Shown in pieces: positions 3,024-60,866 of a DNA stretch of 64,000 nt. The DNA is taken from the IMG/VR virus record IMGVR_UViG_3300005529_000001, positions 248,001 through 312,000 of that record. One strand, written 5' to 3'. Under the pieces are notes generated by a model. It was given only the letters and a program-made list of their open reading frames with translations, was not told the origin of the DNA and did not search any database. Within the stretch, counting starts at the first letter, position 1; the number at the start of each line of letters is the position of its first letter. Both the position numbers and the translations under genes were made by a program.

Positions 3024-3095
3024 TACCGTGCTCCTATAGCGCGCTGTGAATCGCTATAGTAAGTACCACCCGCACGGGTGAAAGACCACTAACGG

Positions 3096-4526
3096 TCAGT
3101 CTTCAACGGTGACGATGGTCAAGCCGCCAAGCGTAGCATCTGCGGGCGATAGCACCGTTTCGCCAGTGAACTTGTTGATGCTCTTGACACGAAACAGCTT
3201 CGTCACCAGGTTCCCGTTCTTGTCATAACCCGTGACTTTCTTGAAACGTCCCGGACGGGTGCCTCGCGGCAGGACTCCGACTGCTGGATCGTCAGGGTTG
3301 ACAGAAACGTCTTCGTTTGGGTACAAACGGGTCCCGCGAGTGTTCCTCTGGTCACGCTGTCGGTTAGCCCAGTTTGGTTGCTGGTCAGAATCGCTTCCCA
3401 AGGGAAGTGTCGGGTCATCTGCACCCAAGAACGGGTTGATGGATGAGTCACCCTCGTCAAGCTCAGCCGTGTTCGTACCGATCGAAAACTCGATCGTTGG
3501 AGAAGACAGGTAGCGTTTCAACGGGACGGGAGCACCGGGAACGCCTGTCGCCAAGATGTACCCAGGCACCTTAACAACGAATTTGTACTTTATCAGCCGT
3601 TCGACTTGCGAGTAATCATCTGCGTTGTTATCAGCTGTATAAGTGTTGGCATCAACGTTGGCCAAGAACCAGTAACCCTTCGGGGTGTTCAGCTGCCATT
3701 GGTTTCCCTGTGGGAGGAACGATGCAATCAGCATCTCGATCAGCTGGTTCATGTGCTTGGTGTACTGCGTCCAAAACGTGACGTCGTATTGCGCGGTGAA
3801 AAACTGCGGTGCTGGCACCACGACTGTCTCCCAGACATTGTTCGCGCGGTTGGGGATCAGCAACCCTCCCTGTTGGATAGCGGGATCCTGTTCCAGATTG
3901 CCAACTGAACGTAACGTTGTCAGCTGTGGTGTGAAGTTCTGCACATCAGTCTCTTCACCGAATGGTGCGTCAGCTCCGAACAGGTCATCACCAAACTCAC
4001 CCGGTACGATGGTGCTAACGCTTGATGGGTACGCGTTCTGTGGGTTCACCGCCAGGTTCTGTTGGTTCGGAACGAGCAGACGGTTGACAAGCTGCTGGTA
4101 ATCACGGTCAGTGCGGTCAAGCTTACGACGGATGACGATCTCTCCCGTCTGTTGGTTGATGCCCCGACCCGTGATGTCTTCGTTCGGAGTCTGGAAGATA
4201 TTGGTCCTGATGATCGTGATTATGGGCAAGATCAGGGCGCCGTTCCTGTCTTTCAGGCCTCTCTGTCGTTTGTTGAGAGCCCACTTCTCACCAGCGGTCA
4301 TCAACACGGGCACTTTGCGAAGACCGTCTGGATCATCAGCGCCGCCCACGACAGTGAACGGAATCTCCTTGTCAAACAAGTTGAACAACGCTCGGTCCAC
4401 GTCGTCAATGCCAACGGGTGGGATGACCAAGTCACGTGACGTAGACTTCCCCTGGTATCCCGACTGTAGTGGCGGGATACCGAGGCGAACCTGAGAAGAG
4501 CTCTGCGAATTAAAGCGAGTGGGCAT
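3096..4526 (-). CDS. gp15: Tail terminator / sheath stabiliser (gp15-like)
   Basis: DDVDRALF...KVPVLMTAGEKW...KDRNGALILPIITIIRT motif; position between gp14-like gene and sheath. Confidence 0.65.
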   Translation of the reverse strand: MPTRFNSQSSSQVRLGIPPLQSGYQGKSTSRDLVIPPVGIDDVDRALFNLFDKEIPFTVVGGADDPDGLRKVPVLMTAGEKWALNKRQRGLKDRNGALILPIITIIRTNIFQTPNEDITGRGINQQTGEIVIRRKLDRTDRDYQQLVNRLLVPNQQNLAVNPQNAYPSSVSTIVPGEFGDDLFGADAPFGEETDVQNFTPQLTTLRSVGNLEQDPAIQQGGLLIPNRANNVWETVVVPAPQFFTAQYDVTFWTQYTKHMNQLIEMLIASFLPQGNQWQLNTPKGYWFLANVDANTYTADNNADDYSQVERLIKYKFVVKVPGYILATGVPGAPVPLKRYLSSPTIEFSIGTNTAELDEGDSSINPFLGADDPTLPLGSDSDQQPNWANRQRDQRNTRGTRLYPNEDVSVNPDDPAVGVLPRGTRPGRFKKVTGYDKNGNLVTKLFRVKSINKFTGETVLSPADATLGGLTIVTVED

Positions 4527-5209
4527 CAGCTATTCTCCGGGTCTTCATCATCATAGAATGCGCTGTCACCTGAAAACTCTCCGCCCTTCTTTGACACTTC
4601 CTTGGCACCCGTGATGGGCTTGTCAAGGACATCGGGCGTCTGCAAGTCTCGAACGTCACCAGTGACGCCTTCCTTGTTGTGAGCTTGCCCTCGTTGTTGG
4701 TAAAACTCTCTCTGTACCGCGTCTTTGTCAGGACGGCTGACGTCTGTCGGGCCGATCGTGAGAGCCTTGAATTGCGTTTCACGGGCCTTGGTTCCGATCA
4801 ACTTGACACCGTCCTTGTGTTCGGGCATGCCGTAGATGTTTCGCATGAACAGCTTCTCAGTGACTTCGTAAAAAACATCTGAGAAAGAAAAGAAGTCTCC
4901 GATGGATGGGCTGATCCCCTTGTCAACCAGGTCACGCCACTGGATGTATACCTCAACCTTGAACTGAGCGTCTACGCCAAAAGCGGTGATCTTGGTGTCA
5001 GCTTGGAAGTGAGTGTCTACCAAGCAATCCAACGCAATAGGAGCGTCAAAGACCTTTTGTACTGCTTCGTTGTAGACAGTGTCAGTCTTCGTCTTGTCTT
5101 CGTTGATGGCATAGTAGTAGACTTTCTGGCCCACCACGTCCTTGATGAGTTCCTTCGTGATGTCCGAGATGAAGTTGAACTCACGTTGTGTCAGGTACAA
5201 GCGTCCCAT
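4526..5209 (-). CDS. gp14: Neck / head-closure protein (gp14-like)
   Basis: ELIKDVVGQKVYYY...PSIGDFF...FYEV pattern; synteny gp13-gp14-gp15-gp18. Confidence 0.7.
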   Translation of the reverse strand: MGRLYLTQREFNFISDITKELIKDVVGQKVYYYAINEDKTKTDTVYNEAVQKVFDAPIALDCLVDTHFQADTKITAFGVDAQFKVEVYIQWRDLVDKGISPSIGDFFSFSDVFYEVTEKLFMRNIYGMPEHKDGVKLIGTKARETQFKALTIGPTDVSRPDKDAVQREFYQQRGQAHNKEGVTGDVRDLQTPDVLDKPITGAKEVSKKGGEFSGDSAFYDDEDPENS

Positions 5210-5217
5210 GTGTCACC

Positions 5218-6450
5218 TCATCCAAAGATGATCGCCTTGCCACCCGGGACAGCGGTGTACTTGAGCATCTTCTGCATCTGTTCACCGATGTTTGCTTGTG
5301 ACTCAAGGAGCTTCTCATACGTCAGCTTTTCAAGGAACTCTTTCAAGTTCGTCATCAGCTTCTCTTTGTCCTCACGGCCCTGGGTGATCAGCGCTTCACC
5401 GTTAAGCTGGAGGTCTGCGTTCGGGATCGGGATGACCTGGAACTTGCTGCGGTTGATGCCCAACAGCTCACGGCACAACGCCAGTGCATACTGCCGGATC
5501 CATTGCCTTCCAGGCGTGGTGATGGTGCTGTAGGGCAGGATGCTGAAGGGAACGTTCTCGGGACCGCTGACGCCGTATGCGCTAGCGTCCTCAAAGTCAG
5601 GTTGCATCACTGACTTGGGGGTGAAGACCCTGACATAGAGGTTGCCCATGCCAAACGGGCCCAACCCATCGCTACCAAAGGATTGGGGCTGTGGGAAGAT
5701 CCGGATCTTGGTGCCGATGACCTGGTAGCTGTAGTTGCTGCGCCTGACGCGGAACGCTTCCTTCAACATGCCACGACGGACGACGTCCTCAAAGACGGGC
5801 AACACGTAGAACACAGTGCTGTTGACATATGACTCGTAGTTGAAGTTCGTGGCAAGAAAGTTGGTGATGTTTGAAGCGTTCAGCAAGAAAGTCTGCGCTG
5901 CTAACGGTTCGAAATGGAAGACTTCCATCACGCGCAGCTTTCCCTTCAAGCCAGCAGGAAGGTTATCAACGACCAGTCCCATGTCAGGGCTTGTCATGCC
6001 GACAGTTGTCGGATCGTAGTTGATGGTCTGGTGCAGTTCCGTGTAGATGTCGTAGTCTTGCTTGCCGGGAATCAGGTTGAAGAATCCCAACGTGTAGTTG
6101 TAGTTTCCACCCACGTATGAAGCTTGCGCATAAGCATCAGCCAACCTGAACAAGAAGTCGAGGTTCTGCTGCAGGTACCTGTTGGTCAGGTCCGTTGACC
6201 CAGTGGGCTGACCGAGAACGTTCGCCAGTTGGCTAACGATCTTCAGTTCTTGGATCAGGCGGCCATACTCAAGGCACGATTGCTCGAGACACGACCAGAT
6301 TTCCTTCTTGGTCAGCTCGACGCTGAGGACATCATCTCCCAACATCCGCTTAGCAAACGTGACCATCGCATCAGCTTCAACCTGGAAAGCTGCATCTGTG
6401 TCAAAGAAGCCAAACGGGGTGGGGTTGACGGTCTGGTTAAAGTTCGGCAC
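5218..6450 (-). CDS. gp13: Neck protein / head-tail adaptor (gp13-like)
   Basis: LGDDVLSVELTKKEIWSCLE and WIRQYALALCRELLG..RSKF..IPIP...LNGEAL motifs typical of gp13. Confidence 0.85.
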   Translation of the reverse strand: MPNFNQTVNPTPFGFFDTDAAFQVEADAMVTFAKRMLGDDVLSVELTKKEIWSCLEQSCLEYGRLIQELKIVSQLANVLGQPTGSTDLTNRYLQQNLDFLFRLADAYAQASYVGGNYNYTLGFFNLIPGKQDYDIYTELHQTINYDPTTVGMTSPDMGLVVDNLPAGLKGKLRVMEVFHFEPLAAQTFLLNASNITNFLATNFNYESYVNSTVFYVLPVFEDVVRRGMLKEAFRVRRSNYSYQVIGTKIRIFPQPQSFGSDGLGPFGMGNLYVRVFTPKSVMQPDFEDASAYGVSGPENVPFSILPYSTITTPGRQWIRQYALALCRELLGINRSKFQVIPIPNADLQLNGEALITQGREDKEKLMTNLKEFLEKLTYEKLLESQANIGEQMQKMLKYTAVPGGKAIIFG

Positions 6451-6527
6451 GAGCTTAACTATGGCGCTGTGAGAGCCCCGATCTAGGCTCTAAGCTCCCC
6501 AGCGATCACCAGAACGGATAACCGAGA

Positions 6528-7070: not shown

Positions 7071-7094
7071 GGCATTTCCGACATTAAATATGTC

Positions 7095-7610: not shown

Positions 7611-7617
7611 GATTGGG

Positions 7618-11295: not shown

Positions 11296-12291
11296 TCACT
11301 TCCACATGAACGCGGAGTCGAATGGAGCCGTCGCTGCGACGCCATAGTTGGCTGCCGCGGTGTAAGTGCCCGGGGTCGATGAGAAGCTGGCGGCAATGCC
11401 CGTCGAGAAGAACGCTCCCCAGGGAGCAAAGTCGACGATGGGTTCTGAAGCGCAGGTCTGAGTGCCCGATACGCTGGTCGGCACCACGATCCACGAGAAC
11501 AGCGGGACAGCGCCTGCTGCTGGTGTCGTCGTGCTGTTGAAGAGTTGCAGGTAGACGCTGCCGCTGCTGCGGTTGGTCGCCCAAACCCTGTACATGACGC
11601 CGGGAGAGCCCTTGATCACTGTCGGGGTGCCACCGCCCGGCATGATGTTGAGGCTGCCCGAGAACGTCGGCGTGTAGATCGATGCGGTGGTGGGCAGCAA
11701 CGCAGTTGCAAAGACACCGTTGAAGTTGTCCTCAGCAACGGGAGCAAACTGCTCTCTCATCGCCACGTTACCCTGGAAGTCTGACTTGAGGGGAGTGATC
11801 TGACCGTTAGAAGCCGAGAGAGAGCCGGTCAGAGACACCGACCAACCGATGGTGTCCTGGATGTTTGCGGGCGCCGTGAGCGGAGCCAGCGGGCTCGGGA
11901 GCCCGGTATAGAGGTTGGTGACACCCACAGAACCAGTGACGAACACCGGGATCGCTGCAGACGAAGAGACACCCACCGGGCCAGTCGAGAACACCGGGAG
12001 CTGGACAGACGCGCTCACTCCAACGTTGCCCTCAGACCAGATCTGGATCGGAACACCGCCCACGACACCCTGCACGGGAAGGGTCGCCGATGCGGTGACA
12101 CCCAAAGGATTGGACGTGGTGACCAGCATCGCGCCGCCGCTCGATGACAGGTACTCGACAAGGCCCGTGCGAGCGTTGTAAGCAGCTTGCAGCTGGCCGA
12201 TCGCCCCAGTGGGCAAAGCCATGCTGCCTGAAACGCCAACGACGTTTCCGTTGATGTCGAACAATATTGTCGTCGGGTTGTTGATGATCAT
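11296..12291 (-). CDS. Putative fibre/virion structural protein
   Basis: Ser/Gly/Thr-rich; short PV(F/Q)xxGxVGV beta-repeats; in the fibre operon. Confidence 0.5.
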   Translation of the reverse strand: MIINNPTTILFDINGNVVGVSGSMALPTGAIGQLQAAYNARTGLVEYLSSSGGAMLVTTSNPLGVTASATLPVQGVVGGVPIQIWSEGNVGVSASVQLPVFSTGPVGVSSSAAIPVFVTGSVGVTNLYTGLPSPLAPLTAPANIQDTIGWSVSLTGSLSASNGQITPLKSDFQGNVAMREQFAPVAEDNFNGVFATALLPTTASIYTPTFSGSLNIMPGGGTPTVIKGSPGVMYRVWATNRSSGSVYLQLFNSTTTPAAGAVPLFSWIVVPTSVSGTQTCASEPIVDFAPWGAFFSTGIAASFSSTPGTYTAAANYGVAATAPFDSAFMWK

Positions 12292-13139
12292 GGCGTCGTC
12301 CTTGTCCTCGACGTCTCAAAGACGCCGTTGTAGACAAAACTATCTGTGAATGAATCAGCCACGGTCACCCCGTCAGACTGGTAGACTGTCCAGCTGCTGG
12401 AGATTATAAGCTGCTTCGAATTCCGTGTGACTATGTTTGTTAGGAACTTCTTGGCCCGCGTGGAGTCTGTCCACCAGATGCTCGCCGTCGGGAAAGGCCA
12501 GGGTCCCGTGTCACGGACAGCGCCCGACGTCCAGAGCTGGCCCCTGGGCCCGTCCTCGTTGGCTAGGTGAACGAGCTGCAGCAACAGTTCATGTTGCGTG
12601 GGAGTCATCGATCCCGTTGGAACGCTGAGAGCGACGCTGATCGTGGTGCCCGGGCCGTTGTCGGTAACGGTGATGCCGTTGGTCCCCGACAGCACCCGGA
12701 AGTTCGGGTTTTCGGCGTCGGGTTGTGCGAGGACGTATGACGCAAACTTGTCGTCTCCCGCGCTGGAGCTGATGGTCACTTGGCCTGACGAGTTTGTCGA
12801 GACCAGGATGCCACCTATGCCTATGAACGCAGCGAGCGGGATCGACGAGCCCTTGGGAGTGAACTGTGTCAACGATCCCGAGAGGGCCGCGGCAGAGATC
12901 GTTCCCGAGGCTGTGATGAACGACATGTCATAGATGCCGTGGCCGCCCCAGTCGATGTCTGAAGTGATCGTGAGTGAACCGCTGCTCATGTTCAGCGGAG
13001 CGCCCTTGCCCGGGCTGTGATCGTGAGCATCGACAACCGCCAGGGCACCCGTCAGCAGCGGGCCCCAGGCCGAGCCGGCGTTACCGCCTGGGGTCACCCC
13101 CACGACGGGGAGCGACATCGACATAAAGGGGGTGGACAT
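12288..13139 (-). CDS. Putative tail fibre protein (anchor-type N-terminus)
   Basis: TP.M.M.LP....WG..L......DAHDH fibre-like N-terminus; GTNGITVT spiral-type repeats; first gene of the lectin operon. Confidence 0.5.
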   Translation of the reverse strand: MSTPFMSMSLPVVGVTPGGNAGSAWGPLLTGALAVVDAHDHSPGKGAPLNMSSGSLTITSDIDWGGHGIYDMSFITASGTISAAALSGSLTQFTPKGSSIPLAAFIGIGGILVSTNSSGQVTISSSAGDDKFASYVLAQPDAENPNFRVLSGTNGITVTDNGPGTTISVALSVPTGSMTPTQHELLLQLVHLANEDGPRGQLWTSGAVRDTGPWPFPTASIWWTDSTRAKKFLTNIVTRNSKQLIISSSWTVYQSDGVTVADSFTDSFVYNGVFETSRTRTTP

Positions 13140-13196
13140 CGTGTGGCTAAATAGGCGGCTGGAGATCGATGAACCACCCTCAGCGGTTCTCTCTCA

Positions 13197-13466: not shown

Positions 13467-13743
13467 CTAGCACCTCCGAGATGGGCTGGGGGACCCGCTC
13501 TCGGCAGTAACTAGGCACGTGGCCCTTGACGATGCTCAGGATGTCTCGAGAAGAGACGAGGGTGCACCGTCCGGTGATCTCGGCGATCCTTCGCTTTGGG
13601 ATGTCATAGTGAGGAAACGCTGACGAAGCGTGGAACCAGCAGCGCTTGATGCCCAGGTCACGAGCCATCTCGTGAAGGTTCTCTACCGAATACGGAAGAC
13701 AGACCAGGTGCCTGGCGTTGTCGCAGACGTACCTGAGGTCCAT
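13423..13743 (-). CDS. DUF4031-family protein
   Basis: HL....ENLHEMARDLGIKRCWFH....PHYDI motif. Confidence 0.7.
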   Translation of the reverse strand: MDLRYVCDNARHLVCLPYSVENLHEMARDLGIKRCWFHASSAFPHYDIPKRRIAEITGRCTLVSSRDILSIVKGHVPSYCRERVPQPISEVLDGHQKNPESPDSGS

Positions 13744-17087: not shown

Positions 17088-17457
17088 GGTGGAAGCGCCG
17101 GGAATCGAACCCGGGTCCGCAACTGCTAACCGTCTACGTCTACATGCTTGTCCCTTCTGGGTGTTCATCCTCGGGCGGGACTATCCGGTGGAACTTTTAC
17201 GACCAACACCGTCACGGTCGGCACTACGTTTTACGCCCAGCGCTTTGGCGTTTTTGCATCCAGGTAGCTGGGTGCGCCCCCACGCATTCTGTTGCTAGGC
17301 CGCGTGGTGCCCCAGACGATCAGGCCGCGAGGCGGACGTCGTCAGCGAAGCCGTTGTCGTTGGCGTTCATTCGTCACTGAGGTTTTTAGACCGGACCTTG
17401 GTGCCACCGGTGCATGCAGCAAACAGTCTCACGATCACGTCGAAACCTGTCGCCCCC
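17088..17457 (-). ncRNA. ssrA: tmRNA (transfer-messenger RNA), tag peptide (A)ANDNGFADDVRLAA
   Basis: 5' GGGGGCGACAGGTTTCGAC; 3' T-arm CCGGG-TTCGATT-CCCGG then CGCTTCC-A-CC; acceptor stem with G3.U70; helix 2 pairing GACTGTTTGC/GTAGACGGTT and TGCATG/CATGTA; tag ORF at 17364..17320; 370 nt. Confidence 0.95.
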
Positions 17458-19617: not shown

Positions 19618-19680
19618 GTGTTATCCTTGTGATAAGTAGGTCAGCGATCTGCTTAAAACAGACAGCCCCAACAAATCCTT

Positions 19681-19736: not shown

Positions 19737-21659
19737 TCAGATGATGTTGAGGTCCATGACCGTGACGGTTCCGTAGAAGTCGCTACGAACGACCTTCTTG
19801 CCGTACCGGGTCATGACGCCCTTACGAGGTGTGAAATCCTCAGGGGCGAAGATCGTCGGAGTCACGATGAGGGGGACGTACGGTGAGTACACGTACCCAG
19901 TCTCGAGGTAGCTGCCGCCCTTGTACCCGACGAGGATGCGGTTCCTCGGGAAGTACGGGTCCTTGTAGACCGTGAAGCGGTTGCTCAGGGTGCCGATCGC
20001 CTCTGCACCGATGGTGAAGGGCGAACCGACCTGACCCTCGCCGTCGATCGAGAACTTCGGCTTGTAGAGGACCGAGGCCTCGAGGATGGTGGCGACATCC
20101 GGGCTGGTGACCATGAAGTTGGCCGAGCCGCGGAGCGTCTTGCGGTGGATGGTGTTGGCAACGTCGATGATGGTCTCGACCAGGGTCTCGTACCACTCAC
20201 GAACCGTACCAGTGAACTGCGGACCGATGCTGAGCGAGGTGTTCAGCGTGACCGGTTGGCCCGTCAGCTTGTTGACGAACTTGCCCGGAGCGCGGCTCCA
20301 GTACATGTTGGCGCCGTTGGCCTGGGTCACGAGGTCGTTCAGGATCTCGCGGTCAATCTCGAGAGCGATCTGCTCGCTCAGGATGCTGGTCAGCTCGACC
20401 TCTGCGTCCATCGAGTGGTACGCGTTGAGGTCCTGTGCCAGCTCAGGGCTCCACCGGGCGCGCAGCTTGCGCGTGGTGGCGGTGATTGCGATCGACTCGA
20501 TCTTGATGTCGATCTCTGGGATCGCCGGGGTCGGGTTGACGTTGAAGTCAGACTCGAACGATGGGATCGTCAGCGTTGCACCAGCGGTGCTGTCGACAGT
20601 CAGTGAGTCAGCGATTGCCATCGATGCAACGATCTGGCCGGAACCCGAGAGGACCAGCTGAGGACCAGCACCGTTGACAGCGACTGCGAAGACCAGCTGG
20701 ACCTGTGTGCCGTTGAGCGGAGCAGGCGTGAAGGTCGTGCCGTTGAAGTTACCGCGCTTGTTCAGGCGGCGCAGGTTGAGGACGCCGTTACCTGACTGGT
20801 AAGACTGGCCCCAAGCGAACGTGCCACCGAGACCGGCGCCCGTTGACTGGAAGTTGAAGACCGCGAGCTGCTCGATGGCGAGGAAGTCACCGTTCGGGAT
20901 CGCCGTCGTGATCGCCGAGACGTCAAGGTGACCGAACTGGATCCACTCGGAACCGTTCTGGAGATCAACCTCGAGCTGGGGATCGAAGTTCAGGAAGCGA
21001 GCGTTGGTGCCCGAGAAGTCCGTCGAGGACTTGACGAAGTTACCAACAACGAAGGCTCCGTTGGTGCCGTTGAAGGCTCCGAAGTTCAGCATCGAACCTG
21101 AGACAGAACCGGAGGCGTGCACCTTGGTGTAGCCCACGTTGACCAGGTCGTAGAAACCGCCCGTTGCGAGCGATCCCGACTGGATGCCCTTGCCGGTTGG
21201 GTTGTTGTAGATCGACTGGCCGGAACCGTAGGTCGCTGCGCTTGCACCGCCTGGCTGGTTCAGCTGCAGACCTGACTGGCCACCGACGTTGCTGCCGTAG
21301 GTGTAGTCAAGGTAGAAGATCAGGCCCGAGGGGAGCGACATCGGCTGGATCGAGACGAGCTCGTTGGCGACGAGGCCACCGAAGACACGACGGACGATCG
21401 GGAAGGCGATGTTGGTGAAGCCCTGGATCTGACCCGAGGAAGCAACGTTCGCGCCGCCCGTGGACAGCGAGTTGCCGACTTCCTTCAGGACCTGAGCTGC
21501 CTGGTTCTCCAGGAGCTGGGCCATCGTCTCGCGCTTGTGACCGTCAAGGCCGCGGAGCAAGCCAGTGCGGCTCCACTTCTCGACCAGGCGGGCACGCTCG
21601 GCGCCGACGTGCCGCTCGCGGATGCCAGCGGCTAGTTGTTCCATTGTAAAGAACTTCAT
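19737..21659 (-). CDS. gp23: Major capsid protein (T4 gp23 family)
   Basis: LVEKW..GLL, LLENQ, PIVRRVF..LVANELVSIQPMSLPSGLIFYL, TRKLRARWSPELAQDLNAYH, EIDREI, YSPYVPL, FTPRKGVMTRYG. Confidence 0.97.
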   Translation of the reverse strand: MKFFTMEQLAAGIRERHVGAERARLVEKWSRTGLLRGLDGHKRETMAQLLENQAAQVLKEVGNSLSTGGANVASSGQIQGFTNIAFPIVRRVFGGLVANELVSIQPMSLPSGLIFYLDYTYGSNVGGQSGLQLNQPGGASAATYGSGQSIYNNPTGKGIQSGSLATGGFYDLVNVGYTKVHASGSVSGSMLNFGAFNGTNGAFVVGNFVKSSTDFSGTNARFLNFDPQLEVDLQNGSEWIQFGHLDVSAITTAIPNGDFLAIEQLAVFNFQSTGAGLGGTFAWGQSYQSGNGVLNLRRLNKRGNFNGTTFTPAPLNGTQVQLVFAVAVNGAGPQLVLSGSGQIVASMAIADSLTVDSTAGATLTIPSFESDFNVNPTPAIPEIDIKIESIAITATTRKLRARWSPELAQDLNAYHSMDAEVELTSILSEQIALEIDREILNDLVTQANGANMYWSRAPGKFVNKLTGQPVTLNTSLSIGPQFTGTVREWYETLVETIIDVANTIHRKTLRGSANFMVTSPDVATILEASVLYKPKFSIDGEGQVGSPFTIGAEAIGTLSNRFTVYKDPYFPRNRILVGYKGGSYLETGYVYSPYVPLIVTPTIFAPEDFTPRKGVMTRYGKKVVRSDFYGTVTVMDLNII

Positions 21660-21677: not shown

Positions 21678-21683
21678 TAAGTA
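21678..21683 (-). promoter_or_regulatory. Putative late promoter TACTTA (representative of about 15 copies)
   Basis: Recurs 5-41 nt upstream of start codons, always on the coding strand. Confidence 0.65.
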
Positions 21684-23830: not shown

Positions 23831-23888
23831 GTCGTCTCCGGAAATCCTAAGTTAAGTATCCAGCCCCCACCTAAGGTGAGGAAGGGCC

Positions 23889-24729: not shown

Positions 24730-24781
24730 CGGTGCACCCTCTCCGTGGTATGCTACCGACTAAATATGCAGACTGCAGAGA

Positions 24782-28512: not shown

Positions 28513-30650
28513 TCGTCTTCCCCGTCGTCGATGATAAATACATCGCTTTCATGAAGCTGGTGACCGCTCAACGATCCACTCTCAACAAGCTCTACATCAA
28601 CTGATCCGTTATTGCCATCGATCTCATCCTGGACATCGCGACCCTCGGACAGGACCTGGTTTGTGTTGTTCCGGGCTGCTTCCCACGTCTTGGTCATCTT
28701 GCCCAGGATGCTAGCAACATCTGGGGGCAACCCCATCCTGTTACCGGCGCTAATGAACTGAGGCGTTTCGTTCAACGTCTGTTCAATCTGATCTTTGGCC
28801 TCAGCAAACGGGTTTGAGATAACGCTCTTCATCCAATCAGCGTCTGTTGGATCTTCCATGGCATGGTTGTCAATACCCGTCATCTTGACGAAGTCTGGCA
28901 AGTGAGTCTTGCTGGCACCATGAGTCCTACGCCGTGAGCGGTTGTAAAGAGCACGTTGCAGCTGAGACTGTGGCTTGACGGGAGGATCTTTGCTGTTTCC
29001 CGCTACCTTCAATGCAAATGACTCGTTGTCATCACGGTCATCGCCACCCGTCAGGAGCTGATGGCTGGGGTTCTCTTCTTCTTCGGCTTCTTCCCCAGCG
29101 TTTTCTTCAGGCGGCGTTTCTCCGCCGGCTTCTTCTCCACCTGCTTCGCCTCCCTCAGGAGCAGCTCCGCCTCCACCACCTCCCCCAAAGATGTCGTCAG
29201 TGCCTCCGCCAGTGTCTTCACCACCCGCTCCGCCAGCGACTCCCTCGATCGTGTCATCGATTTGTTTCTCCGCCATCCGCTCTTCATCAAGCGCCTCGAC
29301 CTGCTCATCGTTAAGGCCCATGATTTCTTTGCGGATGAATTTCTTGCTGACAACGCCCTCAGGGGCTGAGCCGCCGATCTCGAACTTAGCACGCCACAGC
29401 TCGAGCTTCTGCTGTTGAGCGACCGTTGACGGGTTGCTTAGCCGCAACGTAAAGTTCTGCAAATCCTCGCTGTCATAACCGTGCGCATACAGGTGGATGA
29501 TCGCTAGCTTGTTCAGCTCAGCCATCATTGTCTTTTGGACAACGTTGATTGTCCGGCTGAAGCGGATGTCTTCCTGAGCAAGCGTTGCCTTGCTAGAGAG
29601 CATCTCATCGTATCCCAAGTAGGCTCTGGGGATCTTAAGAGCCGCAAAGAGCTTTTTCTGGATGTACGCTACGTCCTCGACGGCGGCGGTGTTCTGCCCG
29701 CCGGCTAACGTGTCGATCTTGGTTCCCGACTCTCCACCACGGACTGGGATGAAGAAGTCCTCCTCGACCGACATTGGATTGTAACGTAGGTCAACTCGTC
29801 CCGTGTTCCGATCAACGACCGGGGTCGTCCTCATCTGTTGGCGTTGTTGCTCGATGTAGGTGTTGACTTCGTTGGCGGGGATGTTTGCGACATCAATGTA
29901 AAAGACGCGGCGCTCGGGAGCACGAACGACACGGTAAACCAACATCGCGTCCTCGATCAAGATCAACTGGCGCCAGATGCGGCGCGCTGGCTCGATGATC
30001 GAAGAACCATAGGGCAGGAACATGTCGTTGCCCAACAACCGGAAGTGAGTGACTTCCCAGTTTTCAAGCGTTCGGTTACCGAGAGTCACCCACCGGTAAC
30101 GGACAGCGAACGGATCGTCCCTATCATAGTTCTCTTCACGCTCAATCTCGTTGACCGGGATCGGGAAAGCATTGATGACACCGTATTCAGGAGAAACGTC
30201 GTTGTAGAGGAAGAAATCACCATACTTGCAGAGGTTTCGAGCCCACGAACGGAGGTTGAACTCGACGTTCAGGACGTTGTAAAACAAGTCCTCAAGCAGC
30301 TCTTTGATCTTCTCGTTGTCCGAGTAGATGTGAAGGACACGGCCCTTCTCGTCTTGGGCACACGTCTCATCAGCATAGATGTCCATCGCTGCCGCGATCT
30401 CAGGAGTGTACTCCATCTCCTGGAAGTCTTGGTAGCGCATCAAGCGCTCGCTCAGGTTGTACGCATTGGACGTGATCGTCGCGTACGTTGGTGAGAGTGA
30501 CTTCTGGAAGAGGAGGGTACCTGATGACTTTGTCTTGTCAGCGACGGCGATCGTCGTGTCAAGGGCGCGGATCTTTCGCTTGACGACAGGTCCTGAACGG
30601 AACAGCCGGGTCAGCCTGCGAAATAAGCTCTTTGGTTCTCTCCTTGCCAT
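28509..30650 (-). CDS. gp20: Portal protein (T4 gp20 family) with long acidic/Gly-rich C-tail
   Basis: PEIAAAMDIYADE, LIEDAMLVYRVVRAPERRVFYIDV, EEDFFIP.RGG..GTKIDTL.GG, YIQKKLFAALKIP. Confidence 0.95.
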   Translation of the reverse strand: MARREPKSLFRRLTRLFRSGPVVKRKIRALDTTIAVADKTKSSGTLLFQKSLSPTYATITSNAYNLSERLMRYQDFQEMEYTPEIAAAMDIYADETCAQDEKGRVLHIYSDNEKIKELLEDLFYNVLNVEFNLRSWARNLCKYGDFFLYNDVSPEYGVINAFPIPVNEIEREENYDRDDPFAVRYRWVTLGNRTLENWEVTHFRLLGNDMFLPYGSSIIEPARRIWRQLILIEDAMLVYRVVRAPERRVFYIDVANIPANEVNTYIEQQRQQMRTTPVVDRNTGRVDLRYNPMSVEEDFFIPVRGGESGTKIDTLAGGQNTAAVEDVAYIQKKLFAALKIPRAYLGYDEMLSSKATLAQEDIRFSRTINVVQKTMMAELNKLAIIHLYAHGYDSEDLQNFTLRLSNPSTVAQQQKLELWRAKFEIGGSAPEGVVSKKFIRKEIMGLNDEQVEALDEERMAEKQIDDTIEGVAGGAGGEDTGGGTDDIFGGGGGGGAAPEGGEAGGEEAGGETPPEENAGEEAEEEENPSHQLLTGGDDRDDNESFALKVAGNSKDPPVKPQSQLQRALYNRSRRRTHGASKTHLPDFVKMTGIDNHAMEDPTDADWMKSVISNPFAEAKDQIEQTLNETPQFISAGNRMGLPPDVASILGKMTKTWEAARNNTNQVLSEGRDVQDEIDGNNGSVDVELVESGSLSGHQLHESDVFIIDDGEDE

Positions 30651-31023: not shown

Positions 31024-31062
31024 CGTGTCATCCTTCTGTGGTTGTAAGTATCCACTCTCGGA

Positions 31063-33089: not shown

Positions 33090-33122
33090 GTGGCGGTGCT
33101 CCCGCAGATAAGTATAACCTGC

Positions 33123-41653: not shown

Positions 41654-41671
41654 GATTCCTGTCTAACTACC

Positions 41672-42493
41672 CTACACCACGATCCCAAGGTCCCTCATGA
41701 CCTGTCGGGTGATGTGGCGGTAATCGTTGAACCCGTTGGCCCGACTGTACTCTCGACCCGCCGCAGCGGTGTTCATCACCCGCTCCGTCAGCAGGAACTC
41801 TTCTGGTTTGACCTCCCAGATCTCCTTTGAACCATCGGTAAAGTAGACGATGAAGTCGGGCACGTGCCATCGCTTGTTGTTGTTATAGTAGTATGGGATC
41901 TTCAGGCTCTCGTATTCCCAGCCCTCGACCGTCGGGCTGGCGTCAAGGAACTTCATCGCCGCTTCCTCCCAGCTCGACTTGAAGAAGTGTTCCTTGGTAT
42001 TCTTCACCGACACGTAGGTTCCCTTCTTGTTCTGGGTGCCGTAGGACCGGAACCTGCCCTCAGTGATCGCCTGTGCCTTCTTCTCTGACATCTTGGCGCG
42101 CGTCTCTTCCGAGTGCTTGCGGCCGTACATGCCGTTGTTGGTGCCAGACCGCTTCTCACCCTTCGAGACCTCGCTCAGGTGGCGTTTCGTCTCCTCGGTG
42201 TGGCTCTTCCCCAGCCAGGGTCGCCATTCTCCTCGGGCTGCCTTTTCTTGGATCGTGGCTTTCGCTTTGGCGTGTGACGCAGGCGAGTTCAGTGCCTGGA
42301 TCGACTTCTGCCACGTCTCCGGGTGATCGTGCTTGTACTTGCCACGACACTTGTTGTCGCAGAAGTGCATCACTCCGCGATCCCTGGTCTTTGACCCTTC
42401 GATGATCGCTTCACAGGCATCACACTTGAAGCGATGGACAATGCTCTTGCGGTTGGTGACGAGAGATCGCCGCTCGATAATCTCCAGGAGCAT
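41672..42493 (-). CDS. Putative homing endonuclease: Zn motif + NUMOD3 + TnsA/gp4-like nuclease domain
   Basis: CDAC..FCDNKC; GKSHTEETK and MYGRKHSEETRAKMS (NUMOD3); KSSWE..HVPDF..EVKP; start moved to ATG 42493. Confidence 0.75.
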   Translation of the reverse strand: MLLEIIERRSLVTNRKSIVHRFKCDACEAIIEGSKTRDRGVMHFCDNKCRGKYKHDHPETWQKSIQALNSPASHAKAKATIQEKAARGEWRPWLGKSHTEETKRHLSEVSKGEKRSGTNNGMYGRKHSEETRAKMSEKKAQAITEGRFRSYGTQNKKGTYVSVKNTKEHFFKSSWEEAAMKFLDASPTVEGWEYESLKIPYYYNNNKRWHVPDFIVYFTDGSKEIWEVKPEEFLLTERVMNTAAAGREYSRANGFNDYRHITRQVMRDLGIVV

Positions 42494-42528
42494 GGCAATA
42501 AGTACCACGCACACTGGCGTTAGCAACG

Positions 42529-54797: not shown

Positions 54798-56174
54798 TCA
54801 GAGGATCTTAGACGCAAGAGTGGCAAGCTCCGATCTCTCGCCCTTGATGAGGGTGACATGGCCGGCGATAGGGTAATCTTTGAACCGCTCGACGGCGTAA
54901 GTCAACCCGTTAGTGAAAACATCCACATGAACGTTGTCAATCTGCTCAATATCACCCGTCAAGATGATTTTGGTGCCATCTCCCACACGAGTAATGATCG
55001 TCTTCAGCTCGTGCATCGACAGGTTCTGGGCTTCGTCGATGACAATGAAGGCGTTCGGGATCGACCTTCCCCTGATGAAAGTGATCGCTTCAATCTCAAT
55101 GAGACCACGCTCCTGCATCAGGTTCAGGTACATGTTATCGTCAAACGCTTGCTTTTCGTTGCCTGCACGCCGCTGTCTCTTGGGACGGTTCCTCTTGGTG
55201 TCCATCAGGAAGTTGAGGTTGTCACGGACGGGAGCGATCCACGGTTCCATCTTCTCCTCAAGGGTCCCTGGCAAAAAGCCAATGTCCTTACCAACGGGCT
55301 GGACTGGACGGGTGACGATCAGCTTGTCATACCGTGCAACAGCTGGGTTTCCTAACGTCTTCAGTTGCTCGAGACCTGCCGCAAGCGCGAGCAGCGTCTT
55401 GCCCGTGCCAGACGGGCCCACCAGCGTCAACAGCTTGATCTTTTCATCAAACAACAAATCAAGCGAGAACTGCTGTTCTTTGTTCCTGGGAGTCAAGCCA
55501 AACGCTTGTTCGATTTTCTCGACGGGAACAAGTGGCTTCTTGGGATCAATGCACTTCGCCAGGGCTGACTTGGTAGGTCGGCCATCGTCAAAAGCGTGCT
55601 TGATGACAACGATCTGGTTTGGGTACAGCTGATGATTACTTGTCAGGTCAAGCTCACCATGCTTGTAGAAGTGATCAATTCGTTCTTCTTCGAGCTCAAT
55701 CACTTCAACGCCACGGTAAAATTTCTGCGGGCTGTCAACAGCCACACGCATCTTTTTGTAGTCTTCACACTTGACACCGATGCTGTCACACTTGATCCTG
55801 ACGTTGATGTCCTTTGACACCAAGATAGAACCATCGACGTGTTTGGCATAAGCGATGATCATGTTGTCAGGCTTGCCCAGTTCTAGCCCAGGCAACTGGA
55901 CGTCTTTGATGGCGTCCATTCGCCCTACCTTTAGGGTCCCACCCTCGTGCAGCTGGACACCTGCGTAGAGACCGCCTCGTTCTCGAAGAGTGTCGAGCGA
56001 TCGGGTCACTTGACGCGCATTACGTCCGACTTCATCGGGTCGGCTCTTGTGACGATCTAGCTCTTCTAAGACAATCATCGGGATGATGACGTCATTTTCT
56101 TCAAATGAAAAGATCGAGTTCGGATCGCTTAGAAGGACGTTGGTATCAAGGACGTACGTCTTCTTCTGGCTCAT
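54798..56174 (-). CDS. phoH: PIN-domain PhoH-family ATPase
   Basis: VLDTNVLL, ELD, D..I, SKDINVR (PIN); GPSGTGKT, IGFLPG..EKMEPW, RGRSI, DEAQN, TRVG...LTGD..QID (PhoH). Confidence 0.92.
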   Translation of the reverse strand: MSQKKTYVLDTNVLLSDPNSIFSFEENDVIIPMIVLEELDRHKSRPDEVGRNARQVTRSLDTLRERGGLYAGVQLHEGGTLKVGRMDAIKDVQLPGLELGKPDNMIIAYAKHVDGSILVSKDINVRIKCDSIGVKCEDYKKMRVAVDSPQKFYRGVEVIELEEERIDHFYKHGELDLTSNHQLYPNQIVVIKHAFDDGRPTKSALAKCIDPKKPLVPVEKIEQAFGLTPRNKEQQFSLDLLFDEKIKLLTLVGPSGTGKTLLALAAGLEQLKTLGNPAVARYDKLIVTRPVQPVGKDIGFLPGTLEEKMEPWIAPVRDNLNFLMDTKRNRPKRQRRAGNEKQAFDDNMYLNLMQERGLIEIEAITFIRGRSIPNAFIVIDEAQNLSMHELKTIITRVGDGTKIILTGDIEQIDNVHVDVFTNGLTYAVERFKDYPIAGHVTLIKGERSELATLASKIL

Positions 56175-57034: not shown

Positions 57035-57067
57035 CTGTTGTCTCCGCCTGTAAATAGGCTTCAGAGA

Positions 57068-57132: not shown

Positions 57133-57363
57133 TTAAGCAGCCTTCTTGTCCTTCTTCGGTTTCGAAGCCTTCGAAGCCTTGTCTGTCTCGACCGTCATCT
57201 TGACAAGCGAAGCCGCAAGGCTCTTCAGCTCACGCAGGCCCTTACGAGCACGGACGCCTGCAGCAGCTGTGCCCCGAGCGTTCTTGACCACGTCAAGCTC
57301 AAGCTCTTCAACGAGCTTCTTCAGTTCAGTCCACTTCTCGAGAACGAGATTGGTGCCTTCCAT
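57133..57363 (-). CDS. Histone H1-like (Hc1-type) DNA-binding protein
   Basis: D..K...G..AAGVRARKGL.ELK motif; GGAGG SD. Confidence 0.75.
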   Translation of the reverse strand: MEGTNLVLEKWTELKKLVEELELDVVKNARGTAAAGVRARKGLRELKSLAASLVKMTVETDKASKASKPKKDKKAA

Positions 57364-57443
57364 TGGTAGTGTCCTCCAGCCATAAGTATACAGCCTGACG
57401 ACTAGCCGTAAAACAAATGGCGGCTTCAGCGCGCGCGAGAGCC

Positions 57444-59160: not shown

Positions 59161-59766
59161 TCAGGCACCGATGATCTTGTCAACAATGCCTAGCTTGATC
59201 GCGTCTTCGGGTGTCAAAAAGTAGTCAAGCATCGGGCGCATAAAGTCCTTCTCTACTTTCTCCTTTGACATCTTTGTCTCTTTCACGAGAGCGCTGACCA
59301 TCAGCTCCTGGAGCCGGCGCGCTTCTTTTGTCTCGTTTTCCATCTCAAAGATGTTTCCCATGACGCCTCCTGAGATCGGGTGGATCATGATGCGTGCAGA
59401 TGCACCGATCAACCGCTTGCCCTTGACTCCAGATGCCAGCAAGAGCACGCCTGCCGACATCACCTTTCCCAAACCCACCGTGTGAACGGGACACGGCAAA
59501 AACTTGAGGATGTCATAGAGAGAAAACATCTCGTCAACGCTGCCACCGTAGGTTGACACAACAAGATAGATCGGGTTCCGATTCAGGTTAGCGAGGTGTA
59601 GTAATTGCGCGATAACATTCGCAATCGAGTGTTCGCTGACCTCGCTATGCAAGTACACGATCCGAGTGTTGTCTACTTGCGACGCTAGAGCACGAGTGAG
59701 ATGCTCGATCTGATCTTCTTCTTCCGCAGTGACACGGTTCCGGTTTTCAAGCGTCGCTCGACCCAT
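59161..59766 (-). CDS. clpP: ClpP-like protease proteolytic subunit
   Basis: RIVYL, STYGGSV, VHTVGLG.VMSAG (Ser), IMIH (His), D.FLTPEDAIKLGIVDKI (Asp). Confidence 0.9.
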   Translation of the reverse strand: MGRATLENRNRVTAEEEDQIEHLTRALASQVDNTRIVYLHSEVSEHSIANVIAQLLHLANLNRNPIYLVVSTYGGSVDEMFSLYDILKFLPCPVHTVGLGKVMSAGVLLLASGVKGKRLIGASARIMIHPISGGVMGNIFEMENETKEARRLQELMVSALVKETKMSKEKVEKDFMRPMLDYFLTPEDAIKLGIVDKIIGA

Positions 59767-60001
59767 CTGGACCTCCCATTACAAACAGATCTTCGCCACC
59801 CAACTCACGAACGAGCTTGGTGATCGCCTTCATCTGTTCAACATTCTCGAGTTCTGAGCTCAACAGGTAGACAAGAAACAACGTCTGACGTTGTGTCAAG
59901 CCTCCTTGCAAGTTGATTTCACGCACAATCTGGCGACAGTGCTCGTTTTCTTCGGCACGTTTTTCAGATTGCATCTGCCCATAGCGCACCGCGTCAGTCA
60001 C
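59747..60001 (-). CDS. Hypothetical protein
   Basis: Operon packing upstream of clpP. Confidence 0.55.
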   Translation of the reverse strand: MTDAVRYGQMQSEKRAEENEHCRQIVREINLQGGLTQRQTLFLVYLLSSELENVEQMKAITKLVRELGGEDLFVMGGPDGSSDA

Positions 60002-60468
60002 TTGACGACCTCTTCTTCACGTTCAAACCCGGCAACATCAAACATGTTTTCACCCAAGATACGAACGTACTTACCGGAACGGGTTCCAGCATCAGTGTCA
60101 GATGCCAAAACCACGAACTCTCCCCACTTCTTGTTGTCATAGATGTGTTTAGCCATCTCCCACGTTGGAAGGTCACAATCACTGCCCTCCAAGATGTCAG
60201 CCAACCTGGGTGCAAGCGATGCTTTGATATCAGCGATCGTCACAATTGAGTTCATCGATTCCTTGCCGCTGATGATCTCTGAACGGTTGATCTCCACCAC
60301 ACGGTGGACGATGCCACAGTTATTGCACTGAGCATACTTTGGGATCACAGTATCATCGTCAGCAACGACAGAAAACACGGTGAACTGGTGCAAGGGTGGC
60401 GAGGCTGCCCGTTTGAACTGCGGCAACGTGCAACGACACGTCACCAGGTGCTTCAAGCCCATTGACAT
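59998..60468 (-). CDS. Hypothetical Cys-containing (Zn-binding) protein
   Basis: CRC...H...CNNC..H.. Confidence 0.6.
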   Translation of the reverse strand: MSMGLKHLVTCRCTLPQFKRAASPPLHQFTVFSVVADDDTVIPKYAQCNNCGIVHRVVEINRSEIISGKESMNSIVTIADIKASLAPRLADILEGSDCDLPTWEMAKHIYDNKKWGEFVVLASDTDAGTRSGKYVRILGENMFDVAGFEREEEVVK

Positions 60469-60513
60469 CAGTTCACCCTCTCAGGGCGTGCCATGCTGCC
60501 GCCAGCCTGGTTT

Positions 60514-60804
60514 TCAGGGGCGGCCTGCGTTTTTTTTCGCTGTTGACTGTTCACGAGCAAGGGCGGCGGGAGCCGCAACGACGGCCTGGTCAACAACCTT
60601 GCAGTATGACCGGAACCCACGATGGTAGCCTTCCTCAAGGGAGGCGTTGATGATCGCCATCAACTTTGTGACTTCCTCGGGCTTGATGTCAAGCTGCGAA
60701 GCTCGCAATGCTTGCGTCACGTTCGTTGACACGGCGTCTTTCATGCCCTCCATCAACGTCCAAGAGGCTTTGCTCAGCATGTCGCGCGGGTTCTTCTCTC
60801 CCAT
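60514..60804 (-). CDS. Hypothetical protein
   Basis: TAGAAT and GGAAGG SD upstream. Confidence 0.55.
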   Translation of the reverse strand: MGEKNPRDMLSKASWTLMEGMKDAVSTNVTQALRASQLDIKPEEVTKLMAIINASLEEGYHRGFRSYCKVVDQAVVAAPAALAREQSTAKKNAGRP

Positions 60805-60866
60805 GGTGCACCTTCCAACATTCTAGCTGCCTACTTAGAGCCAGTAAACCAGCAGAGGGGATCTCG

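What the first reader, a model, noticed from the sequence alone, without database searches (positions are those of the whole stretch)
3060..60837. Strand-specific TA[C/T/G]TTA motif upstream of mostly virion genes: candidate late promoter
Seen on the coding strand. TACTTA at 3060-65, 19633-38, 21678-83, 23853-58, 31045-50, 33109-14, 42499-504 and 57383-88 (minus), and 60832-37 (plus, before a plus-strand gene). TATTTA at 7085-90, 13148-53, 24761-66 and 57051-56. TAGTTA at 6456-61, 13508-13 and 41664-69. Each lies 5-41 nt before a start codon, mostly in short intergenic gaps of GC-rich DNA, with no shared -35. Known: T4 late promoters are a lone -10 element (TATAAATA) read by gp55. Inference: this is a different single-element late promoter read by a phage sigma factor. 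It also flags unannotated genes (histone-like, 60867, 56567) as late.
Basis: partly seen in the sequence, partly recalled or inferred. Interest (0 to 1): 0.6.

Follow-up and report, generated by a model that had tools for sequence, protein, structure and literature searches.

The report
Late-gene promoter motif of a jumbo phage
A short strand-specific DNA word, TA[C/G/T]TTA, sits just upstream of head, tail, packaging and lysis genes of an uncultured 369-kb soil phage and its relatives, and is most likely a variant T4-type late promoter read by a highly diverged, so far unannotated relative of the T4 late sigma factor gp55.

Summary
All listed sites are at the stated coordinates. The window is part of a complete 369,475-bp phage genome. 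In that genome the three hexamers TATTTA, TACTTA and TAGTTA are the three most enriched of all 4096 hexamers in the 48 nt before start codons. There are 45 sense copies against 4 antisense, and 4.9±2.1 in dinucleotide shuffles.

The motif extends to about 8 bp, [C/G][A/C]TA[C/G/T]TTA, and has no -35 partner. It precedes the major capsid, two tail sheaths, the portal and terminase operons, neck, head-completion, baseplate and endolysin genes.

It is also strand-specifically enriched in related phage contigs. A TATTTA-core version recurs in the cultured Microcystis phage Mel-JY01.

The distance from motif to start codon is bimodal: a peak at 5 nt, a gap, then 14 nt or more. That fits a transcription start 6 nt downstream, which is T4 late-promoter geometry, with some leaderless mRNAs.

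The genome encodes a 306-aa protein whose best structural match in the PDB is T4 gp55. No gp33, gp45 clamp or family-B polymerase was found.

Verdict: a new variant of the T4-family late promoter system. It is not yet supported by any transcript data.

The parts
3060..3065 (-). TACTTA, 36 nt before the ATG (3023) of a tail sheath paralog of over 1000 aa that runs off the window
   Evidence: sheath phrog_23 E 7e-48
6456..6461 (-). TAGTTA, 5 nt before the start (6450) of a 410-aa neck / head-tail adaptor-like gene; candidate leaderless transcript
   Evidence: phrog_211 E 4e-9
7085..7090 (-). TATTTA, 14 nt before the ATG (7070) of a 180-aa gene of unknown function
13148..13153 (-). TATTTA, 8 or 29 nt before the start of the 276-283-aa gene 12288-13139 (start ambiguous)
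13508..13513 (-). TAGTTA, 41 nt before the ATG (13466) of an 89-aa ORF; the weakest of the listed sites (small ORF of uncertain start, the longest spacing in the list)
19633..19638 (-). TACTTA, 15 nt before the ATG (19617) of a 153-aa gene just downstream of the capsid gene
21678..21683 (-). TACTTA, 18 nt before the ATG (21659) of the gp23-like major capsid protein gene (19737-21659). TACTTA, TAGTTA or TATTTA occurs at about the same place in 18 of 79 related contigs
23853..23858 (-). TACTTA, 22 nt before the ATG (23830) of a 706-aa gene next to the capsid gene (function unknown)
24761..24766 (-). TATTTA, 31 nt before the ATG (24729) of a 93-aa gene
28535..28540 (-).
31045..31050 (-). TACTTA, 21 nt before the ATG (31023) of a 105-aa gene that heads the portal gene (28509-30650)
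   Evidence: portal phrog_213 E 4e-71
33109..33114 (-). TACTTA, 19 nt before the ATG (33089) of a 126-aa gene directly followed by the large terminase gene (31063-32709)
41664..41669 (-). TAGTTA, 10 nt before the ATG (41653) of a 952-aa gene of unknown function
42499..42504 (-). TACTTA, 5 nt before the ATG (42493) of a 273-aa gene with head-closure and endonuclease matches; candidate leaderless transcript
   Evidence: phrog_218 / phrog_15427
57051..57056 (-). TATTTA, 16 nt before the ATG (57034) of a 155-aa gene of unknown function
57383..57388 (-). TACTTA, 19 nt before the ATG (57363) of a 76-aa histone H1-like (Hc1) gene
   Evidence: Pfam Hc1 38.6 bits against a cut-off of 23.5
60832..60837 (+). 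TACTTA, 29 nt before the ATG (60867) of a 476-aa plus-strand gene of unknown function, in a divergent intergenic gap

Best explanation
TA[C/G/T]TTA, more fully [C/G][A/C]TA[C/G/T]TTA, is the sole recognition element of this phage's late-class promoters. It works like the T4 late 'TATA box'.

Proposed mechanism:
- A phage-encoded gp55-like sigma binds host core RNA polymerase. This is a 306-aa protein at genome 340,740-341,660 (+), outside the window.
- Through its sigma region-2-like domain it reads the motif at about -13 to -6, with no -35 contact.
- Transcription starts about 6 nt downstream of the motif.
- Where the motif lies 5 nt from the ATG, the mRNA is leaderless. Elsewhere a leader of 9 nt or more carries a Shine-Dalgarno site.

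Shown here: the motif's enrichment, strand bias, gene association and conservation; the absence of a -35 element; the existence of the gp55-like protein.

Inferred: that this protein reads this motif; the start-site position; late timing.
For: 1. Statistics. 45 sense copies against 4 antisense in upstream windows, and 4.9±2.1 in shuffles. The three hexamers are the top three of all 4096. 34 of the 51 genome copies of the 8-mer lie upstream of starts.

2. No -35 information.

3. Downstream genes: major capsid, two tail sheaths, the portal operon, the terminase operon, neck, head closure, baseplate wedge, endolysin.

4. Conservation. In 1024 unique upstream windows from related contigs (capsid protein 68-90% identical), sense versus antisense counts are TACTTA 62 to 7, TATTTA 81 to 22 and TAGTTA 25 to 8. 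Mel-JY01 has TATTTAT[AG]TAT 34-38 nt before six structural-gene starts.

5. Geometry. The distance to the start codon peaks at 5 nt, is nearly empty at 8-13 nt, then spreads from 14 nt up. This holds both here and in relatives. It is what a start site 6 nt past the motif predicts. The T4 8-bp box begins at -13 (PMC2988020), so it spans -13 to -6.

6. A second promoter class in the same genome has a -35-like GTG[ACT]AA box and an extended -10 (TGnTAnnnT). Its -10 sits exactly 6 nt before the ATG in 27 of 39 cases. This shows the phage uses leaderless mRNAs, and that the canonical class differs from the TA[CGT]TTA class in both sequence and register.

7. The gp55-like protein. phrog_234 E 6e-5. 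hhalign against gp55 family: 86%, E 5e-6, residues 76-181 aligned to gp55 residues 6-113. In a search of 48,161 PDB representative chains the top hit is T4 gp55 (7d7d_F): Z 11.0, rmsd 2.6 Å, 108 residues. It has more than 1,700 homologs; the 120 best are 67-92% identical. Homologs also occur in the immuto phages, Mel-JY01 and LR756508.

8. No phage RNA polymerase beta subunit was found, so host core polymerase must be used.
Against: - There are no transcript data. No RNA run holds this phage, so start sites and timing are unproven.
- The sequence-level link to gp55 is weak. The profile search against PDB sequences found nothing. hhalign against T4 gp55 alone was negative. Many sigma factors score Z 9-11 on the same domain.
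- The model's C-terminal half has low confidence (overall pLDDT 65).
- No gp33, gp45 clamp, beta-clamp C-terminal domain or family-B polymerase was detected, so T4's activation mechanism cannot simply be transferred.
- The segment just after the motif is not AT-rich, unlike in T4.
- About a dozen motif-bearing genes lie outside the structural region and are unidentified.
- Only 18 of 79 relatives keep the motif before the capsid gene.
- Gene starts come from my own heuristic gene caller.
Confidence: 0.65

Rival explanations
1. The motif is an unusual -10 element read by a canonical sigma-70-family factor. That factor would be either the host primary sigma or the phage's own RpoD-like sigma (268-271 aa, genome 33,359-34,174, minus strand), not the gp55-like protein.
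For: - The phage encodes a genuine sigma-70-family protein: Pfam Sigma70_r2 78.6 bits plus r3. It is 37-40% identical to RpoD-type sigmas.
- The motif begins with TA, as -10 elements do.
- Its position relative to start codons is also compatible, within 1 nt, with a -12 to -7 hexamer.
Against: - The genome's canonical promoters are a separate, well-defined class: GTG[ACT]AA, about 17 nt, TGnTAnnnT. They always end in T and sit 6 nt from the ATG.
- The TA[CGT]TTA class always ends in A, has no TG extension and no -35, and its spacing mode is 5 nt, not 6.
- T at the last -10 position is the hallmark of sigma-70 recognition (established knowledge).
- The two classes head different gene sets: small unknown genes at 64-84 kb versus virion genes.
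Confidence: 0.15
2. The motif is not a promoter. It would be a binding site for a late regulator, or an RNA-level signal on polycistronic transcripts such as a processing site or a translation element.
For: - Genes are tightly packed on one strand, so read-through transcripts are likely.
- The motif lies in the would-be 5' leader region.
- 5' ends from processing can mimic promoters, a caution also raised for T4 (PMC2988020).
Against: - The variable distance to the start (3-60 nt), with a gap at 8-13 nt, fits a start-site constraint, not a fixed translational element.
- At 5 nt from the ATG there is no room for a ribosome-binding signal.
- No hairpin is associated with the sites.
- Register and core resemble the T4 late box.
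- A matching orphan sigma exists in the genome.
Confidence: 0.12
3. Chance, or a compositional artefact of AT-richer intergenic DNA.
For: The hexamers are AT-rich and the intergenic gaps are less GC-rich than the genes.
Against: - The count lies about 19 SD above dinucleotide shuffles of the same windows.
- The 45:4 strand asymmetry cannot come from composition.
- Other AT-rich hexamers such as TATATA are not enriched, and TAATTA does not occur in the genome at all.
- The motif is conserved in relatives spanning 36-63% GC.
Confidence: 0.01

Closest known systems
Bacteriophage T4 late promoters (TATAAATA) read by gp55, with gp33 and the gp45 sliding clamp
   Same: - A single element of about 8 bp in the -10 region with no -35.
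- It precedes head, tail, packaging and lysis genes.
- About 45-50 copies per genome.
- The TA...TA frame is shared when aligned (T4 core TAAATA, here TA[CGT]TTA).
- The inferred start is 6 nt past the element.
- A gp55-like sigma is encoded.
- The virion module is T4-like: gp23-type capsid, gp17-type terminase, gp20-type portal, sheath.
   Different: - The two central bases differ: A-A in T4, [not A]-T here. The T4 word TAAATA never occurs sense-upstream (0 sense, 11 antisense).
- The first two positions are [C/G][A/C].
- The downstream segment is not AT-rich.
- The sigma is 306 aa with a basic N-terminal tail and a different C-terminal half.
- No gp33, gp45 or family-B polymerase was found. 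The related immuto phage uses family-A polymerase.
- Many of the inferred transcripts would be leaderless.
Variant late-promoter consensus of divergent T4-like phages (Aeromonas phage Aeh1: a/gC at -13/-12; cyanophage S-PM2, KVP40, 44RR), all predicted in silico
   Same: It shows that the first two positions of the box drift among T4 relatives while the core is kept (PMC2988020). Here too positions -13/-12 are not TA.
   Different: Those phages keep the TAAATA core and the gp33/gp45/gp55 set. Here the core itself is changed and the co-factors are missing.
Extended -10 / -35 sigma-70 promoters (host type), as in this phage's own GTG[ACT]AA-N~17-TGnTAnnnT class
   Same: An upstream element positioned so that transcription starts at or near the start codon. 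Both classes give leaderless mRNAs in this genome.
   Different: The TA[CGT]TTA class lacks the TG extension and the -35, ends in A rather than T, sits one base closer to the ATG, and serves a different gene set.

Membership tests
T4-type gp55-dependent late promoter system | Single element of about 8 bp in the -10 region, with no conserved -35 | tested here: met
   Information is confined to the hexamer plus two 5' bases, and is 0.2 bit or less from -50 to -3
T4-type gp55-dependent late promoter system | Consensus sequence TATAAATA (core TAAATA) | tested here: not met
   The consensus here is [CG][AC]TA[CGT]TTA. TAAATA occurs 0 times sense-upstream and 11 times antisense, and is not enriched in relatives
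T4-type gp55-dependent late promoter system | Element at -13 to -6 relative to the mapped transcription start | tested here: inconclusive
   No RNA data exist. Indirect evidence: the spacing mode of 5 nt to the ATG and the gap at 8-13 nt fit a start 6 nt downstream
T4-type gp55-dependent late promoter system | Phage encodes a gp55 homolog | tested here: met
   phrog_234 E 6e-5. hhalign against a gp55 alignment 86%, E 5e-6. Top PDB structural match is 7d7d_F, which is gp55: Z 11.0, 108 residues, rmsd 2.6 Å. The homology is remote; sequence-only searches against PDB and hhalign against T4 gp55 alone were negative
T4-type gp55-dependent late promoter system | gp33 co-activator present | tested here: not met
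   phrog_254 finds nothing in the genome at E up to 1. A 112-aa candidate protein has no PHROG match. A very divergent analogue cannot be excluded
T4-type gp55-dependent late promoter system | gp45 sliding clamp as activator | tested here: not met
   phrog_223 and PF02916 give no match. The beta-clamp family PF02768 gives no match. No family-B polymerase, PF00136
T4-type gp55-dependent late promoter system | Drives virion and lysis genes late in infection | tested here: inconclusive
   The gene association is met. Timing cannot be tested without expression data
Sigma-70-type (-35/-10) promoter | -10 hexamer TAnnnT with a -35 or a TG extension | tested here: not met
   The last base is always A, and there is no TG extension and no -35. 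A separate class in the same genome does meet this definition

The most novel reading that the evidence does not exclude
A large, mostly uncultured clade of phages combines a T4-like virion module with non-T4 replication. The clade is marked by more than 1,700 homologs of the sigma-like protein, found in soil, mine and freshwater samples on contigs up to about 360 kb. These phages would run late transcription with a gp55-type sigma that has shifted its specificity from TAAATA to TA[CGT]TTA. It would act without the sliding clamp and gp33, that is, uncoupled from the replication fork, and would produce many leaderless late mRNAs.
Probability: 0.35. Interest if true: 0.7.

Novelty: new variant of a known kind. 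Interest (0 to 1): 0.6.

Why it matters
- It gives a sequence rule for finding late genes in a very large family of uncultured jumbo phages in which most genes have no known function. In this genome it marks about 50 transcription units. Among them are a histone H1-like protein and several large unknown proteins, which it flags as candidate late or virion-associated proteins.
- It assigns a function to a highly conserved protein that is labelled 'hypothetical' wherever a source names it, including in the cultured immuto and Mel-JY01 phages.
- It offers a natural experiment on how gp55-type sigmas change DNA specificity.
- It raises the question whether clamp-coupled activation, the defining oddity of T4 late transcription, is dispensable in deep relatives.
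- Mel-JY01 and the immuto phages are cultured, so the prediction can be tested directly.

Tried and rejected
- Megablast of 14 kb of the window against GenBank phages: no match.
- Profile search of the sigma-like family against PDB sequences: nothing.
- hhalign against the single T4 gp55 sequence: negative. Homology appeared only with deeper alignments on both sides and by structure.
- Foldseek against PDB: no hit at E of 0.001 or better, although nearly all top rows were sigma factors.
- Search for RNA sequencing runs: only DNA metagenomes hold the phage (one soil, four mine).
- Searches of the genome for gp45 (phrog_223, PF02916), the beta clamp (PF02768), gp33 (phrog_254), family-B polymerase (PF00136), RNA polymerase beta (PF00562) and a second late-sigma family (phrog_12791): all negative.
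- Idea that the sigma-like protein's conserved C-terminus (...DPKF[KR]LF) is a clamp-binding peptide shared with other proteins, as in T4. A scan of all predicted C-termini found only one loosely similar case, a 112-aa protein with no PHROG match. This is left as speculation.
- Idea that terminator hairpins precede the motif: no enrichment (p = 0.28).
- A weak second Sigma70_r2 hit turned out to be an aminotransferase.
- Literature search for TACTTA as a phage late promoter, and for Mel-JY01 or immuto promoter work: nothing relevant in the held library.
- PHROG and Pfam gave no function for many motif-led genes: the 706-, 952-, 476-, 180-, 155- and 153-aa genes, among others.

Full report
**What the window is.** The window is bases 248,001-312,000 of a single-contig virus record of 369,475 bp. 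The record has 56% GC and direct terminal repeats, and is rated 100% complete. It has no near-identical relative among GenBank phages. The same DNA is held in one soil metagenome run (the possible source) and, in part, in four mine metagenome runs. No RNA run holds it.

Its virion and packaging genes are distantly T4-like:
- gp23-type major capsid protein, window 19737-21659, minus strand (phrog_138, E 2e-75)
- large terminase, 31063-32709
- portal, 28509-30650
- prohead protease, 59161-59766
- two tail sheath paralogs of over 1000 aa
- SbcCD, primase and helicase

The nearest named capsid relatives are Microcystis phage Mel-JY01, the Flavobacterium immuto phages, Rhodothermus phage RM378 and two uncultured huge phages.

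In the window, TA[CGT]TTA occurs 27 times against 13.4 expected, and 20 of the 27 are on the coding (minus) strand.

I called genes with a codon-usage and ribosome-site heuristic, which gave 584 genes. I then counted hexamers in the 48 nt before every start:
- TATTTA, TACTTA and TAGTTA are the three most enriched of all 4096 hexamers, at 53x, 35x and 19x the coding density.
- There are 45 sense copies against 4 antisense.
- TAATTA does not occur anywhere in the genome.

Dinucleotide-preserving shuffles of the same windows give 4.9±2.1 copies (maximum 12 of 500) against 45 observed. For the window alone they give 1.5±1.1 against 15.

Aligning the 45 sites shows two more informative bases, giving [C/G][A/C]TA[C/G/T]TTA. 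Of the 51 genome copies of this 8-mer, 34 lie just upstream of starts. No position from -50 to -3 carries more than 0.2 bit, so there is no -35 element. Hairpins are not enriched upstream either.

**Which genes follow the motif.** Of the downstream genes that could be named, most are virion, packaging or lysis genes:
- the major capsid protein
- both tail sheath paralogs
- the small gene heading the portal
- the small gene heading the large terminase
- a neck or adaptor-like protein
- a head-closure-like protein
- a baseplate wedge protein
- an endolysin

Many other motif-led genes have no detectable family. About a dozen motif-led genes lie outside the structural region at 150-310 kb.

**A second promoter class, and leaderless mRNAs.** The same k-mer screen revealed a different, two-part element: GTG[ACT]AA, about 17 nt, then an extended -10, TGnTAnnnT.
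- It occurs about 39 times, mostly before small unknown genes packed at 64-84 kb.
- In 27 of 39 cases the -10 ends exactly 6 nt before the ATG.
- That is canonical sigma-70 geometry with transcription starting on the A of the start codon, which gives leaderless mRNAs.

This matters for the finding in two ways. First, it shows what sigma-70-type promoters look like in this genome, and the TA[CGT]TTA class is clearly different: it ends in A, has no TG extension and has no -35. Second, it shows that leaderless translation is normal here.

**Geometry of the TA[CGT]TTA class.** The distance from the motif to the start codon is bimodal:
- In this genome, 13 of 45 sites lie at 3-7 nt (mode 5, seven sites), two lie at 9-10 nt, and the rest lie at 14 nt or more.
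- In 1024 unique upstream windows from relatives the same shape appears: a peak at 4-6 nt (mode 5), almost nothing at 8-13 nt, then a broad spread from 14 to 36 nt.

This is what a promoter starting about 6 nt past the motif predicts. Either the mRNA begins on the ATG, or the leader must be long enough to hold a Shine-Dalgarno site. Leaders of 1-7 nt serve neither mode of translation and are avoided.

The T4 late box is 8 bp and begins at -13 (Geiduschek and Kassavetis 2010, PMC2988020), so it spans -13 to -6. That leaves 5 nt before +1, the same register as here. Aligned this way, the T4 core TAAATA corresponds to TA[CGT]TTA: four of six bases are shared and the two central bases differ. The variable first two positions recall the Aeh1 variant noted in that review.

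**Conservation.** More than 599 IMG/VR contigs encode a related capsid protein; the 80 best kept are 68-90% identical. Across the larger loci, which span 36-63% GC, TA[CGT]TTA is consistently more frequent sense-upstream than antisense. After de-replication, TACTTA is the strongest strand-asymmetric hexamer that is not part of a ribosome-binding site, at 62 sense against 7 antisense. TATTTA is 81 against 22 and TAGTTA 25 against 8. Pieces of T4's TATAAATA are not enriched.

Before the capsid gene itself, the motif is kept in 18 of 79 relatives, mostly the GC-richer loci. The others show CCAAC followed by a T-rich stretch.

In the cultured Microcystis phage Mel-JY01 (36% GC), TATTTAT[AG]TAT recurs 34-38 nt before six structural-gene starts. 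Background is high in that AT-rich genome, so this is suggestive rather than conclusive.

**The sigma factor.**
- The genome has no RNA polymerase beta subunit, so host core enzyme must be used.
- It encodes an RpoD-like sigma of about 270 aa, with Sigma70 regions 2 and 3, at 33.4-34.2 kb.
- It also encodes a 306-aa protein at 340,740-341,660 (+). This protein has no Pfam match and only a weak match to the PHROG family of T4 late sigma factors (E 6e-5, residues 80-180).

The 306-aa protein has more than 1,700 homologs in metagenomes; the 120 best are 67-92% identical, and every source that names one calls it hypothetical. It has 27-29% identical homologs in the immuto phages, Mel-JY01 and the huge phage LR756508, also unannotated.

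A profile of this family aligns with a profile of gp55 proteins at 86% probability and E 5e-6, pairing its residues 76-181 with gp55 residues 6-113.

An AlphaFold model is confident only for residues about 80-190. In an exhaustive comparison with 48,161 PDB representative chains, the top hit for that domain is chain F of 7D7D, the T4 gp45-dependent transcription activation complex:
- Z 11.0, rmsd 2.6 Å, 108 residues aligned (the most among the single-domain matches with rmsd of about 3 Å or less), in the same register as the profile alignment
- chain F is gp55

Other sigma region-2 domains score Z 8-11. The safe statement is therefore 'a sigma region-2 fold whose closest solved relative is gp55'.

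The gene lies in a plus-strand operon whose first gene has an extended -10-like TGTTACAGT upstream. That fits expression before the late class.

**What differs from T4.** Searches for gp33, the gp45 clamp, a beta-clamp C-terminal domain and a family-B polymerase were all negative. The related immuto phage is annotated with family-A polymerases. This clade therefore joins a T4-like virion module to a different replication apparatus. The clamp-coupled activation that defines T4 late transcription may be absent, or may be replaced by something unrecognised. The segment after the motif is not AT-rich as it is in T4.

**Conclusion.** The motif is real, strongly non-random, strand-specific, conserved across a large phage clade and tied to virion and lysis genes. 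Its best explanation is a variant T4-family late promoter read by a diverged gp55-like sigma, with many leaderless transcripts.
- I put about 0.8 on 'promoter of the late or structural class'.
- I put about 0.65 on the full statement, including the identity of the sigma.
- The main rivals are recognition by a canonical sigma (0.15) and a non-promoter role (0.12).
- Chance is excluded.

Nothing here is supported by transcript data. The cultured relatives make the decisive experiment feasible.

**Housekeeping.** Gene starts come from my own heuristic caller, and individual distances may shift with better annotation (for example site 13148).

Noticed in passing
Genome G000 about 64,000-84,000 (minus strand; loci L006-L007), outside the window: A block of about 25 small genes, each preceded by GTG[ACT]AA, about 17 nt, then TGnTAnnnT ending exactly 6 nt before the ATG. 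This is a very regular leaderless promoter class, probably early and read by the host sigma or the phage RpoD-like sigma.
   Followed up: partly
window 17088-17457 (-): The phage encodes a tmRNA with tag peptide ANDNGFADDVRLAA.
   Followed up: no
window 57133-57363 (-): A 76-aa protein matches the Chlamydia-type histone H1-like family Hc1 (38.6 bits against a cut-off of 23.5). It has a TACTTA 19 nt upstream. It could be a late DNA-condensing or packaged protein.
   Followed up: partly
window 3-3023 (-), continuing to genome 247,835; and genome 244,579-247,725 (L016:5379-8525): Two adjacent tail sheath paralogs, each over 1000 aa and each with its own TACTTA upstream.
   Followed up: no
Genome 33,359-34,174 (-), L101:1060-1875: An RpoD-like sigma factor of about 270 aa with Sigma70 regions 2 and 3, 37-40% identical to RpoD-type sigmas in other phage records. 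The phage therefore carries two sigma-like proteins.
   Followed up: partly
Genome 340,740-341,660 (+), L002:1267-2187; alignment A1: The gp55-like protein has a variable, lysine-rich N-terminal tail and a conserved extreme C-terminus...DPKF[KR]LF. The latter may be a docking peptide. No matching clamp was found.
   Followed up: partly
L108 (Microcystis phage Mel-JY01, 1-50,000): TATTTAT[AG]TAT lies at a nearly constant 34-38 nt before six structural-gene starts, at record positions 17394, 26699, 31600, 34466, 35093 and 36233. Nothing on this was found in the held literature.
   Followed up: partly
window 25280-25774 (-), 54798-56174 (-), 62294-63490 (-): Auxiliary genes sit among the structural genes: peptide deformylase, a PhoH-like ATPase and a GroEL-like protein.
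   Followed up: no
window 41672-42493 (-): A 273-aa protein matches both an endonuclease family (phrog_15427) and a head-closure family (phrog_218). It may be a fusion or an inserted nuclease domain. The motif lies 5 nt before its ATG.
   Followed up: no
L021-L100, 70 nt upstream of the capsid gene: Across relatives the capsid upstream region keeps a CCAAC box. In some it is followed by TACTTA, TAGTTA or TATTTA; in others by TTT-rich variants such as CAACTTTTTGA or CAACTTTATT. These may be diverged versions of the promoter or a separate conserved element.
   Followed up: no
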